Shown: positions 36,588 to 54,155 of the stretch, piece by piece
How the letters are laid out: each line of letters starts with the position of its first letter
Position numbering within the stretch: the stretch's first letter is position 1
Assembly: GCF_002571385.2 (NCBI RefSeq)
Contig: NW_019217982.1
Span: 150,491-214,490 of the forward strand
Source of the DNA: Stylophora pistillata
Lineage: Eukaryota
DNA length: 64,000 bases
Reading direction: 5' to 3'
Translations under genes and position numbers: made by a program
Notes under the pieces: generated by a model
Seen by the model: only the letters and a program-made list of their open reading frames with translations
Databases searched by the model: none
What the model was told of the DNA's origin: nothing

Positions 36588-38607
36588 TCAAACGTCGTTC
36601 TGGTCGTTCTGGTACCTCTGGGATCTTCTTTTATCAAAAGAAGAACTGGCATTGTCGACAATGGACCCGACTGACCTGGAAACGGAATTTGACGCCGGAT
36701 TGACCTCCCTTGAGAAAAGGCTGCCGCAGGGGATGATGCGCAGCAGAGTAGCTCGGAATCTGTCATTCATCACCGTGTACACTATGGGGTTGAAGATAAC
36801 AGAGGCTTTGGCGAGTAAATCCGGGACCTCTGCCTCTGAAGGTGTCAGCGAATTCGTACCCCGGATGGTGGCAATGATGCTAACCAAGCAATATGGCGAC
36901 CAGCTCAACACGAAGGCGGCAATTGACATCGCAATCGTGCGCACCATTCTAATCTGAGACTTTCTTCGACTGGCTTCCACTGAGGCATTGCCTGAGGTGG
37001 GTTGTTGAGTGCGAATGAAGCTAAGATGGAAGAGAAAGCTGTTTGTCTGTGATAATGAATGGTATTAATAATAACAATATTTAACGAGGGAACGTAACTC
37101 GCCAAGGCAGTTTTTAGTGGGCCATCATAAGAGCCCCCAGTGGGGCCCTTAACAGCAGTTTTTTTTTCTTGTGGGACCTGTAGCAAAGCCGATAAAAGGA
37201 AGTTTAAACCACGAACGCAGCAACATCAGGAACGTCACTAAACAAAAAGTTTTATGAGCATAACAATGGCTGTGCATGTGCGTTACAAATCTTTGTAAAT
37301 TTCTTTGCCTCTACTGTAAAACAACAACGTGATATGACCGAACGTTGCGTTGTCTAGAAAATGTGAACGACGAAGGCTAATTTTTTAAATCTTATTTCTA
37401 ATTTAATGCTGTGTTCCCTATTCAGTTTCGAGATAGTTTTGACGGTGAGAAACGCACTCATTGACTTTCTAGTGTCGTGCGGTACAAAGGTAAAATATAA
37501 GTTCATGTTTTAACCGACGTTGTCCACGGCGTCGCCGTCATCGTTTCTTATGTAACCTGGTAGCTCTTTTTAGACTTGTCACTGAACGATTTATCATCCA
37601 ACAAGCCGTCCATGAAAAAACGAATTTTTCGGCCAAGAATAAATAAGTTTTCGGAGTAATGCTAGGCAGAAAATAAAGGTTTAGATCTTCGGAGTAAAAA
37701 AATGAATTTTTTGAGACCCTTACGGATCATATTGAATGCAATGTTTAAGAAGGGTTGGAATGCAGAAAGCGTAGCCTGCCTAAAAACACGGACTACTTCT
37801 TAAGTTCATTTTCTTGTTAAAATACCCATCTCTGACACCAAAAGTTGCAAAACCTTCTCTTCCGATTTCAAGACCAGGTTAAAACACATATTGATTAAAA
37901 CATCAGATAGACTGTTCTCCCCTCCCCCCCCCCCCCGAGTAAGCGTACCTGTAGATTCGATAGTAACAGAAAATAATGACACTCAGTGGCAGCACGAAGC
38001 CGACAAAAACCAGAAACATATTGTACGCCACTCCAGCCTTCGTTTCCGGAACCCAATTAGGACAGCAGCTGATACCGGAGGCACCTGGAACGAATTCGTT
38101 CCAACCCACTAACGGCGGAATCATGGACGTCACTCCATACACCCACGTGAACGTGATAATGGCCGCCATTTTGATTGTGGAGATTTTTGTCGTCTTAGTC
38201 ACTGAACTAACACCGTGAAACATCACCAAACTCATCATGGTCAGATTGGCGATGGAAGCGATGCCAGTGGCGCCATTGATAAATCCCGACCATATGCAAA
38301 GCGGCCGACTTTCACGAAGGTTGAGGCCGGAGGAAGCAAAGTTACTTGAGACGACCACAGGATAGCCAAAGACAATTATAATGATGTCAGCGACTGCCAA
38401 GTTTATCATGAGTGGAGTGATGTTTTTCCTTCTGTGTTCAGGACAGCGTAAGACAAGGATTGTCAGAACATTGCCCACCAAGCCGACTGCCAAGATTAAA
38501 CCCATAACGACCCCATACGAAATGAGGATGTCTGCATCCAGATGGAATTCTCTATCGCTGTTAATTTTTATTGAAGTCGTACTCGGAACTCCGGTTGACG
38601 GACTCAT
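36588..38607 (-). CDS. Opsin A, anthozoan-specific opsin group II (ASO-II)-like; 2 coding exons 37949-38607 and 36588-37020; 363 aa
   Basis: 7TM class-A motifs: GN (TM1), NLAVAD (TM2), C110, PPLVGWNEFVP..SC187, SWSPY (TM6), PDLLAK296ASVIFNPIVY..MNDRFR (TM7). Phase-2 intron TACAG|gtacgc...tccatcttag|C gives an open frame to TGA. Group assignment comes from absent E181 and E113 with an acidic residue at 292; no tree was built. Confidence 0.92.
37197..37558. mobile_element. MITE-like repeat in the opsin A intron
   Basis: Degenerate TIRs ggaagtttaaaccacgaacgc / gcgtcgccgtcatcgtttcttatgtaacc. The internal motifs are typical of a common coral repeat. Confidence 0.5.
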
Positions 38608-40533
38608 TGTTTCCCTGTCAAACCTTTACGTATTTGAATCTTGATCAGTTGTTGGACTTGTAATTTTCTGATACGTTTAATAATTCTGCAAAGGAATTCA
38701 AAATATACTCATGAAGATAGATATGACAAAGGATAATATCATTTAAAATACACTAAGTTCACTTGCCGTTATGTAGCGATCTCGCACGCTTCATAATATG
38801 CAGCGTAATGTTTGTTTTACAGGCATGTTGGGTTGTAATTACCTATTTATGAGAATAGAACCAAGAGTTTTGTACTCTCCTATCTTCGTGCGTAAAGGCT
38901 TAACTGAGTTTGAACCTTGGCTAGAAAATAATGCTTCTCTCTGGTGGTACTCTTTTTTATCATTTATGGAAATAAAGCTTTTTGTTTTCCAGTAGAGAAG
39001 AAAGGTAAGGCGGCACGATTTAAATTCTATCGGACGAGCTTAAAGTATCTTAGTCAACCACGCCCCTGTGTTTGTTTACTTTCGGAAGAGTACAATATCA
39101 TTCTTGCGATAGTTAAAACCAAGGGAACATTAGTTGAAGTTCTCTTATTGGCACAGACAGAAGTAATTAGATAGTGGATGAAACTAAAGAAATGATAATG
39201 TTCAGAGATAACAACGATAATTGAAGTCCTGTGTAGGGGCCACTCGTTAGGATGCAAGGGGACTGGAACCGGCAAAATTAATTCCAAACACCGTGACAAT
39301 GGTATAGGAAACAACTGATATTCCGGTTCGTGATTGCAAAGCATTTTGGTTGAATAGATACTTTACTTTCTAAAGCAAATTGCGGACCACAAAGTACTAA
39401 GATTCAAATCCTTCTGACCGAGCTTTTTTCATTATTTATTATGTTTATTAAGCGAACGAATACAAAGACGAGGCTAGCACGTAATGTGAGTAAAGGACAG
39501 GGAGAGGTGCATGAAAAAAAAATGACACTGAGCGAGTATATATGGAAAAAAGTGAGGGACAAATGAATAAAGCCCGGCGATATCTGGCATGGACTAGAAA
39601 GGGCCTTAAACATGCAATAACGAGTTCATTATTTAATGAAAAATATAAGCCGAAGAAGGCTTTAATGGTGACTTTGTTCGGTGACGGTGTAATTTTGTCG
39701 GCAAGCGGTTTGTAAATACCTTCAGCTTCCTAACCGCATAAAACTTCGTCTAATTTCTATTATGACGATACACGGATGAGAAAAAAATCTTTGAGAGATT
39801 TCCTCTTCCAATAAGCGAAGAGAGCGGAATTTAACGTGATTTGGGAACCGTGTTAGTAAATGTGTTACAGTGGATCACAGACTACTTGAACGCTTGGATT
39901 TTTAACATTTGAGTTGTATATGAAAACAAACAAGCATGAAAACAAATTCATGTCAAGGGTGCTTTAAAAATCGCTGTGAAAATTTAAACCGATTCATAGC
40001 TTTGAAGTTTGGAATTTTTCCCGAAATGCGCAACACATATAGTTTTACACGGGAGGGGGGGGAAGCGATGTTGTTTAAGAGATTCGCCTTCCATGAGAAG
40101 TGGTAACTGAAGAAAGAGTTAAAGAAAGGAATATCGTATGGGAGGTTAATGCTACGCGCTGAAAAAGTACAGTAATATAAAAGACGTACGTTCTCTCCTA
40201 ATAATTCCAGAAACCGGGAAGTTTGAATTGTGTGTTTTGAGTTGTAAATTCCTTTCAAAGATGAAATCTTATAAGAGATTCCTTCTTTCAGTTCATACAA
40301 TCGCGACTCGCTCTGAGCAGGGAAAAGGAAAAAAACAAAACGCTCTGTTTTGGATAATACTACTCTCGGTCACCATCTTGTCTGTCAACTCAACTTCAAA
40401 GTATTCATTCGGTACGCTTCGCTATCTCTCGCGTGATAGACACACGATCGTGTGCCAGAAATGATAGACCTTCTCGTAGAAAAAATGTAGGAAAAGTAAA
40501 CGAATGAAAGTGATCATCTGTCATTGTCAACTT

Positions 40534-52577: not shown

Positions 52578-54155
52578 TCAAACTGGAACTGGCCATTGTC
52601 TGTTGAGAGAAGTTTTTAATGAGATGTCATCATCACTGAAGGTACCCCCTGAATACACCACACTATGGGCTCTATCCCTTGGCGGATCCGGTATTGTGCA
52701 AGCATGTGTGGGGCGTGATTTTACTGTGGATGATATTTTTTTCCCCAATGGATTCTTATCCTTGAGGAGGATGCAGCTAATTGGAACGATACGCATCAAG
52801 GTCTTACGGAATCTAACGTTCATTGCTGTGTATACAACGGGATTGTAGATAACCCAGGCCTTAGCAAGTAGATCCGGGACTTCTGCCGCTTCAGGTGTCA
52901 GTACATTAGTACCCCGGGCGGTGGCCATGATACTGACGATAGCGTACGGAGACCAGCTCAAGACAAAGGCTGCAATTGACATGGCAATCATGCGTACGAC
53001 TTTGATTTCGGATTTTCTTCGAATGGCTTGAATCGAAGCACTTCCATGAGTTGGTTTCTGTGCACAGATATACCTGCAAAGTAAAGGATCCTGTTGGAAG
53101 TATATCTCTGTAACTTTCCTAGAAGTTAGCCCCACGCGACTTAGTGACCTGCTTTCCAGGTAATGCTTTTCGTTTCTTTTATCTTTTTTTTCTTTTATTT
53201 GATTTGCTCTGTATCAAGAAAAACGGATCAACCTTGATAACTATAGGATTTGTTAAATAATTCATGATTACGGCTGACCACTTGTGAAACCTTCTTTGAA
53301 ATTTAATTTCCGTCGTGGAAATCCATGTTATTAAATATGGAATCAGGTCATTTTGTTTAACCAAGAACCTCCGTGTTCCGTGAAATTAAGTCCACGTTCT
53401 GCATTTTGATCATATCGAATATGTAACAAGGAGTATTGGTTGAGTATAATAATTGCCCTTTGTAACAAAAATTTGTTTCATGACCTGTATATTCTGTGAT
53501 AAGCACACATAATGACGGTTAGTGGAAGAACAAAGCCAACGAAAACCAGCAACACATTGTACGCCACTCCAGCTTTAGTTTCAGGGGACCAGTTAGGACA
53601 GCAGCTGATACCAGAGGCGCCTGGGACGAACTCGTTCCAACCCACTAACGGCGGGACCATAGCCATCACTCCGTACACCCATGTGAGTATAATGATGAAT
53701 ATTACCTTGCATCTGGAGATTTTTGAATTGTTGCTGACCTTGTTTATGACAGAATACATCACCAGACTCATCACAGTCAGGTTGGCAATGGAAGCAATTC
53801 CAACAGAGCCATTGATAAATCCCGACCAATTGCACTGGAACCGACTGTTACGCACGTTGAGTCCGGAGGAAGTAAAGTTTGCAGCGACCACCACTGGATA
53901 TCCAAAGACAATAATGATAATGTCAGCGATCGCGAGGTTCATCATGAATGGGGTGATACTCTTGCTTCGGTGCTCATGGCAACTTAAGGCTACTATAGTC
54001 AGCAAGTTGCCAACAAAACCGACTGCTAAGATAACAGCCATGACGACGATATATACGATGACACCTGTAGCATTTGGACGGATCTGGGGTTCTTGACCGG
54101 CGAGAATCATCTGCGTTGCGCTAGGAGCCTGAGTTGAAAGGTTGAAGGCATTCAT
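52578..54155 (-). CDS. Opsin B, ASO-II-like tandem paralogue of opsin A; 2 coding exons 53485-54155 and 52578-53073; 388 aa
   Basis: GN, NLAIAD, C110, PPLVGWNEFVPGASGISCCPNW, SWSPY, PDLLAK296AWVIYNPVVY..MNVRFR. Phase-2 intron at the same position as in opsin A (TACAG|gtcatg...tttgcag|G). Open to TGA. Confidence 0.92.

What the first reader, a model, noticed from the sequence alone, without database searches (positions are those of the whole stretch)
36588..54155. Tandem pair of opsins with no canonical counterion but Asp292 plus Glu289: candidate variant of the chloride-counterion system
Seen (bovine numbering by motif alignment): both keep Lys296 but have Val94, Ser113 and Gly181, so none of the known counterion carboxylates (E94 box jellyfish, E113 vertebrate visual, E181 bistable opsins). 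Both have Ser186 and TM7 E289-V-P-D292-L-L-A-K296 (opsin A D292 at 36819-36821, E289 at 36828-36830; opsin B at 52872-52874 and 52881-52883). Established, as I recall: Acropora ASO-II opsins lacking E181 use a chloride ion held near Glu292/Ser186 in the dark state. Inference: the shorter Asp292 with a second acid one helical turn away could change anion affinity, pH sensitivity or UV/visible balance, or serve directly as the counterion.
Basis: partly seen in the sequence, partly recalled or inferred. Interest (0 to 1): 0.75.

Follow-up and report, generated by a model that had tools for sequence, protein, structure and literature searches.

The report
Coral Antho2c-type opsin gene cluster
These are two of three neighbouring coral light-sensor genes of a type whose Acropora relative has already been shown to use chloride as its counterion, so the find is real but mostly ordinary.

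Summary
Two intact opsin genes lie on the minus strand, each with two coding exons. Both have Lys296, Val94, Ser113, Gly181, Ser186, Glu289 and Asp292 at the stated codons.

The assembly gap is intergenic and touches neither coding sequence.

The interpretation as a new variant is weak:
- Exact protein matches name the genome as Stylophora pistillata. Opsin A is XP_022793722.1.
- A third tandem copy lies 2.4 kb beyond the window.
- All three fall in one well-supported clade with an Acropora/Montipora group that carries Cys188, Asp292 and Glu289.
- Those are the residues published for Acropora tenuis Antho2c. That pigment has Asp292, absorbs at 450 nm and needs chloride to stay protonated (eLife 2025). 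It regenerates thermally through Cys188 and couples to Gi/o (bioRxiv 2026).
- Glu289 is shared by 60 of 61 relatives, including those with Glu292.

Minor news:
- Opsin B has no match in the protein collection I searched, yet it is transcribed and spliced.
- The Stylophora copies carry Glu177/Asn190 where Acropora carries Lys177/Asp190.
- The three copies differ at site 269.

The parts
37949..38607 (-). Opsin A coding exon 1 (ATG at 38607; TM1-TM5; ends AG|gt, phase 2)
   Evidence: Pfam 7tm_1 E 5.1e-24. Exact substring of P0119 = XP_022793722.1.
37021..37948 (-). Opsin A intron (GT..AG, 928 nt)
   Evidence: The junction residue Ser is confirmed by database proteins P0001 and P0119, which read ...RIYS/FIRTQQ....
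36588..37020 (-). Opsin A coding exon 2 (TM6, TM7, helix 8, tail; stop TGA 36588-36590). Holds E289 at 36828-36830, D292 at 36819-36821, K296 at 36807-36809.
38062..38064 (-). Opsin A Cys188 codon (TGT), next to disulfide Cys187
53485..54222 (-). Opsin B second exon: 5' UTR from 54222, ATG at 54155, TM1-TM5, ends AG|gt in phase 2. Holds Cys188 at 53598-53600.
   Evidence: Pfam 7tm_1 E 3.1e-24.
53074..53484 (-). Opsin B intron between the coding exons (411 nt)
   Evidence: A joint skipping 411 letters is seen in a 1726-nt contig of run X1 and in one raw RNA read of X22. A 19-letter loose end in polyA RNA run X2 matches the start of exon 2 at 17 of 19 letters by my own comparison by eye, which no call checked.
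52578..53073 (-). Opsin B last coding exon (stop TGA 52578-52580). Holds E289 at 52881-52883, D292 at 52872-52874, K296 at 52860-52862. The 3' UTR runs on to at least 52100.
58884..59020 (-). Opsin B 5' non-coding exon (upper end approximate). Intron 58883..54223 follows it.
   Evidence: Contigs of X1 and X2 run on past 54224 with 130-137 letters that are unlike the window there. Their first 30 letters match 58886-58915 with 1 mismatch; 0 matches are expected by chance. The GT donor and AG acceptor were read.
50592..51383 (.). Assembly gap between opsin B (3' side) and opsin A (5' side); intergenic for both coding sequences

Best explanation
[quoted passage not shown] This is the subgroup to which the characterised Acropora tenuis Antho2c most likely belongs.

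Shown here:
- Both genes are intact, and opsin B is transcribed and spliced.
- They keep Lys296 and the Cys110-Cys187 pair.
- They have no acidic residue at 94, 113 or 181 and no E/DRY motif.
- They carry Asp292, Glu289 and Cys188.
- At the 45 retinal-pocket and motif sites compared, their residues are almost the same as in the Acropora members of the clade.

Inferred by homology:
- They bind 11-cis-retinal and absorb blue light.
- In the dark they hold the Schiff-base proton with a bound chloride ion, not a carboxylate. Residue 292 stays neutral and helps to bind the anion.
- After light, Asp292 may take over as counterion.
- Cys188 lets the all-trans photoproduct revert thermally to the 11-cis dark state.
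- The active state signals through Gi/o.

Glu289 is a clade-wide residue two helical turns above Lys296. It is probably structural or part of the extracellular entrance, not a second counterion.
For: Gene models and residues.

Identity: exon 1 plus Ser plus exon 2 of A equals P0119, XP_022793722.1 'pinopsin-like [Stylophora pistillata]'. By eye, the translations of the third copy printed read the same as P0011, XP_022793717.1; no script checked this.

Own-genome search: three matches lie on contig C199, all on the minus strand.

Trees:
- Exon 1: a 14-row clade (100/98, starred) holds A, B, the third copy, Pocillopora, Oculina, three unnamed coral rows, and the Acropora/Montipora group.
- Exon 2: the same set forms a 13-row clade at 85/91, not starred.

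Residue table of 61 proteins:
- Asp292 in 50, Glu292 in 10, and one gapped.
- All 48 Asp292 rows that cover site 188 have Cys188.
- Glu289 in 60 of 61.

Pocket sites: at the 45 sites compared, A, B and the third copy differ from Acropora P0063 only at 177 and 190 (all three); 269 (B and the third copy); 167 (B and the third copy); 134 (the third copy); 136 (B and the third copy); and 247 (A).

Literature:
- Antho2c has Asp292, Cys188 and Asp190, and C188S abolishes thermal recovery (preprint passages and section 6).
- Antho2c absorbs at 450 nm and needs chloride (eLife section 14).
- ASO-II opsins lack E(D)RY yet signal (eLife section 5).

Selection: dN/dS is 0.18-0.19 for A against the other two, and 0.31 for B against the third copy.

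RNA: the splice of B is seen in runs from separate studies.
Against: - No spectroscopy exists for these proteins, so every functional statement is by homology.
- Identity to the Acropora group is only about 61-64% over exon 1.
- I could not fetch the Antho2c sequence (LC844934). Equating it with the Acropora cluster P0030/P0063 rests on three published residues plus species.
- The Stylophora copies have Asn190 where Antho2c has Asp190, a residue its authors suspect of tuning the photocycle. They also have Glu177 in place of Lys177.
- Two Oculina members of the same clade have Glu292, so residue 292 is not fixed within the clade.
- Cys188 also occurs in two Glu292 paralogs on contig C490.
- The eLife alignment figure supplement and all supplementary files were not visible to me.
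Confidence: 0.75

Rival explanations
1. Asp292, alone or with Glu289, is the direct dark-state counterion in these Stylophora opsins. They would then not need chloride.
For: Asp is shorter than Glu, and its pKa could differ in this pocket. The Stylophora copies differ from the characterised Acropora type at 177 and 190, which could change the local electrostatics. Nothing measured here excludes it.
Against: Antho2c already has Asp292. It still loses visible absorption without chloride and is stabilised by 9.3 mM NaCl (eLife section 14). Pocket residues are nearly identical. The eLife authors searched for acidic residues within 5 A of the Schiff base and named only 292. Glu289 also accompanies Glu292 in other ASO-II opsins.
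Confidence: 0.1
2. Opsin B is a duplicate under relaxed constraint, on its way to loss or to a changed role, rather than a working equivalent of its neighbours.
For: No protein more than 85% identical was found in the protein collection (39 hits among 445 candidates). Its end branch is long: 0.14 and 0.30 against 0.07 and 0.04 for the third copy. It reads 25 residues past the stop used by the third copy and by Pocillopora.
Against: The reading frame is open in both exons and the splice sites are canonical. dN/dS against the third copy is 0.31. All key residues are kept. Spliced transcripts are found: a 1726-nt contig of X1 has no indel in the coding part. Twenty of the 24 runs listed, from 9 studies, hold part of the stretch, and 4 of those are on record as RNA.
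Confidence: 0.12
3. Because Val-Met-Phe/Tyr replaces the E/DRY motif, these proteins do not signal through G proteins. They would act as retinal isomerases or light-independent receptors.
Against: The eLife paper says all seven cloned A. tenuis ASO-II opsins lack E(D)RY, yet Antho2a, 2c and 2e gave light-induced Ca2+ responses (section 5). The preprint's abstract reports Gi/o activation by Antho2c.
Confidence: 0.04

Closest known systems
Acropora tenuis Antho2c (AtAntho2c, GenBank LC844934): chloride-dependent, self-regenerating ASO-II opsin
   Same: It shares Asp292, Cys188, Lys296, the absence of acidic residues at 94/113/181, and the absence of E(D)RY. The Acropora cluster that carries these residues lies in the same starred clade as A and B. 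At the 45 sites compared, A, B and the third copy differ from it at only a few.
   Different: - Asn190 in place of Asp190, and Glu177 in place of Lys177.
- Site 269 is Cys in A, as in Acropora, but Ala in B and Thr in the third copy.
- Three tandem copies in Stylophora, against one Acropora cluster retrieved here.
- About 61-64% identity over exon 1.
- The function of the Stylophora proteins has not been measured.
Acropora tenuis Antho2a: the ASO-II opsin in which the chloride counterion and the switch to Glu292 were worked out
   Same: It is an ASO-II opsin with no canonical counterion, an acidic residue at 292, Ser186 in the Schiff-base region, and no E(D)RY.
   Different: Antho2a has Glu292, Ala94 and Leu113, and absorbs at 503 nm. 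The window genes have Asp292, Val94, Ser113 and Cys188. The Stylophora gene that looks most like Antho2a (contig C296: Tyr91, Ala94, Leu113) has Leu289 with Glu292.
Opn5L1 and the bovine rhodopsin G188C mutant: photocyclic opsins that depend on Cys188
   Same: Cys at position 188 beside the disulfide Cys187. The preprint links this residue to thermal recovery of the dark state.
   Different: They belong to unrelated opsin lineages and have a carboxylate counterion. Opn5L1 runs the cycle in the opposite direction, from an all-trans dark state.

Membership tests
Animal opsin (retinal-binding class A GPCR) | Seven-transmembrane rhodopsin-family domain | tested here: met
   Pfam 7tm_1 in 4 of 4 exon translations, the last 0.5 bit under the cut-off. 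The best solved-structure matches are cone opsin, bovine rhodopsin and squid rhodopsin.
Animal opsin (retinal-binding class A GPCR) | Lys296 in TM7, the Cys110-Cys187 pair, and NPxxY | tested here: met
   for both A and B.
ASO-II opsins of the chloride-counterion type (Sakai et al. 2025) | No Glu or Asp at 94, 113 or 181 | tested here: met
   Val94, Ser113 and Gly181 in A and B.
ASO-II opsins of the chloride-counterion type (Sakai et al. 2025) | Acidic residue at 292 | tested here: met
   Asp292 in both. The paper says Glu or Asp at 292 in all A. tenuis members.
ASO-II opsins of the chloride-counterion type (Sakai et al. 2025) | No E(D)RY motif at the end of TM3 | tested here: met
   VMF in A and VMY in B. 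The paper states the same for A. tenuis ASO-II.
ASO-II opsins of the chloride-counterion type (Sakai et al. 2025) | Schiff-base protonation depends on external chloride | not testable with these tools
   Needs purified pigment and a chloride and pH titration.
Antho2c-type (self-regenerating) subgroup | Falls in one clade with Antho2c | tested here: inconclusive
   A and B are in a 14-row clade (100/98, starred) with the Acropora millepora/cervicornis cluster that has Cys188, Asp190 and Asp292. In the exon-2 tree the clade has 85/91. The named Antho2c sequence itself was not available.
Antho2c-type (self-regenerating) subgroup | Cys188 | tested here: met
   TGT at 38062-38064 in A and at 53598-53600 in B.
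Antho2c-type (self-regenerating) subgroup | Asp190, named with Asp292 as lying near Cys188 | tested here: not met
   Asn190 in A, B and the third copy. The preprint offers Asp190 only as a candidate modulator, not as a defining residue.
Antho2c-type (self-regenerating) subgroup | Thermal all-trans to 11-cis recovery and Gi/o coupling | not testable with these tools
   Needs spectroscopy, HPLC of retinal isomers and G-protein assays.

The most novel reading that the evidence does not exclude
The Stylophora tandem triplet may be a natural series of chloride-counterion, self-regenerating opsins that have diverged in kinetics and colour.
- The swap from Lys177/Asp190 to Glu177/Asn190 removes the residue that the Antho2c authors suspect of tuning the photocycle.
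- Cys, Ala and Thr at site 269 could shift the absorption maximum between copies.
- The fast-evolving copy B, which has no match in the collection, may have taken a separate role.
- One of the three is the opsin reported in alga-hosting cells. That would tie this photochemistry to the control of symbiosis.
Probability: 0.2. Interest if true: 0.5.

Novelty: new member of a known kind. Interest (0 to 1): 0.3.

Why it matters
The chloride counterion and the Cys188 self-regeneration were worked out in a single Acropora protein each. This window shows that the same residue set is kept across robust and complex corals. It also shows that Stylophora has it in three tandem copies.

That offers ready-made natural variants at sites 177, 190 and 269 for testing what sets chloride affinity, colour and photocycle speed.

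It also narrows the search for the opsin expressed in Stylophora alga-hosting cells to this cluster. Copy B, which I did not find in the protein collection, may be missing from the gene models that expression atlases use.

It does not change what is known about opsin counterions.

Tried and rejected
Tried, led nowhere
No coordinates were available by any other route, so the statement that Glu289 lies two turns above Lys296 rests on helix periodicity only.
I used the own-genome search and read laying instead.
- A 5' exon of opsin A homologous to that of B: there was no similarity between the 12 kb upstream of A and the 9.8 kb upstream of B. Only a 124-nt, 70% match was found upstream of the third copy. 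Whether the gap lies inside an upstream intron of A therefore stays open.
- Which of the three copies is the alga-hosting-cell opsin: Levy et al. 2021 (PMC8162421, passages only) and the preprint (passages) give no gene identifier in the text, and supplements are closed.
- Gornik et al. (PMC8097283, passages): the passages shown say nothing about residue 292. A search for '292' found none, and 'counterion' occurs only in the reference list.
- The azooxanthellate-coral paper (PMC13440232, passages) added nothing on this subgroup.

Considered and rejected
- Glu289 as a distinguishing feature. It is in 60 of 61 relatives and is invariant in the 24-row alignment A1. The one exception I found is the Antho2a-like gene on contig C296, which has Leu289.
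- A tandem pair. It is a triplet.
- ORFs across the gap. They consist only of X.

Not in print, as far as searched: the term 'Antho2c' occurs in 3 held papers, of which the search listed 2. I found no paper that characterises a Stylophora member.

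
Full report
**What is in the sequence**

Two opsin genes lie on the minus strand.
- Opsin A has a 659-nt first coding exon (38607..37949), a 928-nt GT..AG intron, and a second coding exon (37020..36588). It encodes 363 residues.
- Opsin B has a 671-nt first coding exon (54155..53485), a 411-nt intron, and a second coding exon (53073..52578). 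It encodes 388 residues.
- The intron is in phase 2 at the same place in both, just after TM5.
- All 4 of 4 exon translations match Pfam 7tm_1. The E-values are 5.1e-24, 1.3e-07, 3.1e-24 and 4.7e-07, and the last scores 30.0 bits against a 30.5 cut-off.
- A tblastn of two full-length relatives against the window finds only these two genes.

**The gap**

The window has N runs at 21381-21984, 24729-24749, 27283, 50592-51383 and 56410. The run named in the finding lies about 1.2 kb downstream of B's stop and about 12.0 kb upstream of A's start.
- It lies in neither coding sequence, and no real frame crosses it. The ORFs listed over it are only X.
- Transcripts of B cover at least 478 nt past the stop, down to the low end of the stretch I laid. 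The remaining 716 nt or so to the gap were not examined.
- Continuity across the gap could not be tested, because my single read-laying run went to opsin B. That A and B are neighbours therefore rests on the scaffold.

**Numbering**

HMMER aligned opsin A to bovine rhodopsin chain 1f88_A: exon 1 residues 34-217 to 43-225, and exon 2 residues 13-116 to 238-340. Reading the printed alignments gives:
- Asp83, Val94, Cys110 and Ser113.
- Val-Met-Phe at 134-136.
- Glu177, Gly181, Ser186, Cys187, Cys188 and Asn190.
- Trp265, Tyr268 and Cys269.
- Glu289, Val290, Pro291, Asp292 and Lys296.

Opsin B was numbered through its alignment with A. It has the same residues, except Val-Met-Tyr at 134-136 and Ala269.

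**Whose genes they are**

- The product of my model of A (exon 1, then a junction Ser, then exon 2) is letter for letter P0119. The source calls it XP_022793722.1, 'pinopsin-like [Stylophora pistillata]'.
- A Logan-derived protein from a 1980-nt contig, P0001, is 99% identical and reads straight through the junction. I take that contig for a spliced transcript.
- The window is contig C199:150491-214490 of a 398-Mb assembly. The contig is 525,208 bases long, the same length as the contig on record for the two named Stylophora proteins.

**A third copy and the rest of the family**

The own-genome search with exon 1 of A listed 20 matches at E <= 1e-10.
- Three are on C199, all on the minus strand: A, B, and a third gene at C199:216861-217484. 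The third gene begins about 2.4 kb past the end of the window.
- By eye, the translations of the third gene printed read the same as P0011, XP_022793717.1. No script checked this.
- Between B and this copy there is only the single N at 56410.
- More distant ASO-II genes are four on contig C490 (45-48% identical), one on C32 and one on C296. The remaining matches are 30% identical or less.
- Reading their TM7 exons gives Asp292 in 4 of the 9 (A, B, the third copy, C32) and Glu292 in 5.
- Glu289 is present in 8 of the 9. The C296 gene has Leu289 instead. That gene carries Tyr91, Ala94 and Leu113, the residues the eLife paper names for Antho2a.

**Relatives elsewhere**

- The word search with exon 1 of A gave 61 proteins at E <= 1e-5 among 481 candidates. 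A second search with the TM6-TM7 part of P0119 gave 24 among 112.
- I aligned the 61 stored proteins of 280-499 residues. Many of them are near-identical members of the same 90% clusters, so the counts are of rows, not of independent lineages.
- Position 289 is Glu in 60 of 61. The exception is a truncated, misaligned row.
- Position 292 is Asp in 50, Glu in 10, and a gap in 1.
- All 48 Asp292 rows that cover position 188 have Cys188.
- Glu292 rows include two Oculina proteins inside the same clade (a third, partial Oculina protein also has Glu292), an Acropora 'melanopsin-like' cluster, an Actinia protein and a Stylophora C490 gene.

**Trees, built per exon with no joined sequences**

- Exon 1 (22 rows, 220 columns): one clade of 14 rows has support 100/98 and is starred. 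It holds A, B, the third copy, Pocillopora damicornis, two Oculina proteins, three unnamed coral transcripts, and a group of Acropora, Montipora and three unnamed rows. Within it, B, the third copy and Pocillopora form a starred trio (99/98).
- Exon 2 (21 rows, 121 columns): the same set forms a 13-row clade at 85/91, not starred. The trio has 100/100.
- The place of A within the clade is unresolved. It is weakly linked with Oculina in exon 2.
- Rows left out: I used one representative per 90% cluster and dropped fragments.

**What is known about this kind**

- I read the abstract, sections 5, 12, 14, 15 (part 1) and 30, and passages of Sakai et al., eLife 2025 (PMC12401545).
  - It reports that all seven cloned A. 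tenuis ASO-II opsins lack acidic residues at 94, 113 and 181, lack E(D)RY, and carry Glu or Asp at 292.
  - Antho2a (503 nm) uses chloride as dark-state counterion, with a neutral Glu292 helping to bind it. Glu292 is the counterion of the photoproduct.
  - Antho2c (450 nm) shows the same chloride dependence.
- I read the abstract, section 6 and passages of the bioRxiv preprint 10.64898/2026.05.24.727572.
  - It states that Antho2c has Asp292, Cys188 and Asp190.
  - Its all-trans photoproduct reverts thermally to the 11-cis dark state.
  - C188S and C188A abolish that recovery.
  - It activates Gi/o.
  - A Stylophora homologue with Cys188 is the opsin that Levy et al. 2021 found in alga-hosting cells (PMC8162421, passages).
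- The Acropora cluster in my clade (P0030, P0062, P0063; A. cervicornis and A. millepora) has exactly Cys188, Asp190 and Asp292, and also Glu289. I take it for the Antho2c orthologue group. This is an inference, because LC844934 itself could not be fetched.

**Comparison of the pocket**

At 45 numbered sites around the chromophore and in the signalling motifs, A, B and the third copy differ from Acropora P0063 only as follows:
- Site 177: Glu against Lys, in all three.
- Site 190: Asn against Asp, in all three.
- Site 269: Cys in A, as in Acropora, but Ala in B and Thr in the third copy.
- Site 167: B and the third copy differ.
- Site 134: the third copy differs (Leu against Val).
- Site 136: B and the third copy differ (Tyr against Phe).
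- Site 247: A differs.

From memory, not from a call: in bovine rhodopsin Arg177 and Asp190 form an ion pair that stabilises the dark state, and 269 is a known tuning site in cone pigments. If that carries over, the Stylophora copies have lost the ion pair that Acropora keeps as Lys177-Asp190.

**Is B a working gene?**

- No protein more than 85% identical to its first exon exists among the proteins I retrieved or in a dedicated search (39 hits at E <= 1e-60 among 445 candidates).
- It was not found in the protein collection, so I take it to be unannotated. I did not check the annotation itself.
- It is nevertheless expressed. Twenty of the 24 listed runs, from 9 studies, hold part of the stretch. 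Four of those are on record as RNA, and the rest are guesses or unknown.
- On laying four runs, a 1726-nt contig of X1 skips exactly 53074-53484, one raw read of RNA run X22 shows the same joint, and a contig of polyA RNA run X2 ends at the junction with 19 loose letters. By my own comparison by eye they match the start of exon 2 at 17 of 19. No call checked this.
- One contig of X12 covers part of the intron. That could be unspliced RNA or DNA carry-over.
- Contigs of X1 and X2 continue upstream of 54224 with letters that match 58886-58915 (1 mismatch, none expected by chance). The intron between has GT and AG ends. B thus has a 5' non-coding exon about 4.7 kb upstream.
- In X22 the first mates lie on the plus strand, as expected for a minus-strand RNA in a common stranded library.
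- dN/dS between B and the third copy is 0.31 at dS 0.33. For A against either it is 0.18-0.19, at a dS near saturation.
- B has a longer end branch than its two nearest relatives in both trees. It also reads 25 residues past their stop.
- I conclude that B is functional but evolving faster.

**How it most likely works**

Shown: the residue set and clade membership above. Inferred by homology to Antho2c and Antho2a:
- It forms a blue-absorbing 11-cis-retinal pigment.
[quoted passage not shown] Residue 292 is neutral and supports anion binding.
- The counterion may switch to Asp292 after light. The preprint itself calls this untested for Antho2c.
- Cys188 allows thermal return to the dark state.
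- It signals through Gi/o despite the missing E/DRY motif.
- Glu289 lies seven residues, about two turns, towards the extracellular side of Lys296. The eLife authors found only residue 292 as an acidic residue within 5 A of the Schiff base. A direct counterion role for Glu289 is therefore unlikely. Its near-universal conservation suggests a structural role or a role at the entrance, which I could not test.

**Verdict**

The finding is real, correctly located and correctly classed as ASO-II. The feature offered as new is the published signature of a characterised subgroup, and tandem duplication of ASO-II genes is already described in Nematostella (PMC10512536, passages).

New here are only details:
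- a three-gene cluster;
- a copy that is transcribed but has no match in the protein collection;
- natural substitutions at 177, 190 and 269.

A second look-up by words found nothing else.

Supplementary files and figure supplements, which hold the A. tenuis alignment, could not be seen. They may already show which other A. tenuis opsins carry Asp292 or Glu289.

Noticed in passing
G000:C199:215907-217500 (about 1.4-3.0 kb past the window's end); loci L002, L013: A third tandem paralog lies on the same strand. By eye its translations read the same as XP_022793717.1 'pinopsin-like' (P0011). It has Cys188, Asn190, Glu289, Asp292 and Thr269. The cluster is therefore a triplet, not a pair.
   Followed up: yes
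window 52578-54155 (opsin B): No protein more than 85% identical was found in the protein collection, although spliced transcripts exist. B has the longest end branch of its trio, and a 25-residue C-terminal extension past the stop used by its closest relatives.
   Followed up: partly
window 38095-38097 and 38056-38058 (A); 53631-53633 and 53592-53594 (B): Glu177 and Asn190 occur in the Stylophora, Pocillopora and Oculina members, and in three unnamed rows. The Acropora members have Lys (or Gln) 177 with Asp190; Montipora has Lys177 but Asn190. The Antho2c preprint names Asp190 as a candidate modulator of the Cys188 photocycle.
   Followed up: partly
window 36888-36890 (A) and 52941-52943 (B): Site 269 differs among the three paralogs: Cys in A, Ala in B, Thr in the third copy. 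This is a possible spectral tuning difference. The tuning role of 269 is recalled, not tested here.
   Followed up: no
window 54451-55152 (+), inside the 5' intron of opsin B: A 233-aa ORF whose sequence looks like the tail of a retroelement reverse transcriptase. It has no Pfam hit at E <= 0.001.
   Followed up: partly
window 1718-2305 (-), 9502-10572 (-), 15295-16332 (-): There is an ORF with a GHMP-kinase N domain, and two retroelement pieces (endonuclease-RT and RVT_1). An older Stylophora gene model, PFX23700.1 'L-fucose kinase' (2441 aa), fuses opsin A to downstream genes and a retroelement.
   Followed up: partly
G000:C296 (locus L014) and G000:C32 (locus L008): The C296 gene carries the residues named for Antho2a (Tyr91, Ala94, Leu113) and has Leu289 with Glu292. 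It is the only ASO-II relative seen here without Glu289. The C32 gene has Asp292 with Asn186, Gly188 and Tyr113, so Asp292 also occurs outside the Antho2c-type clade.
   Followed up: partly
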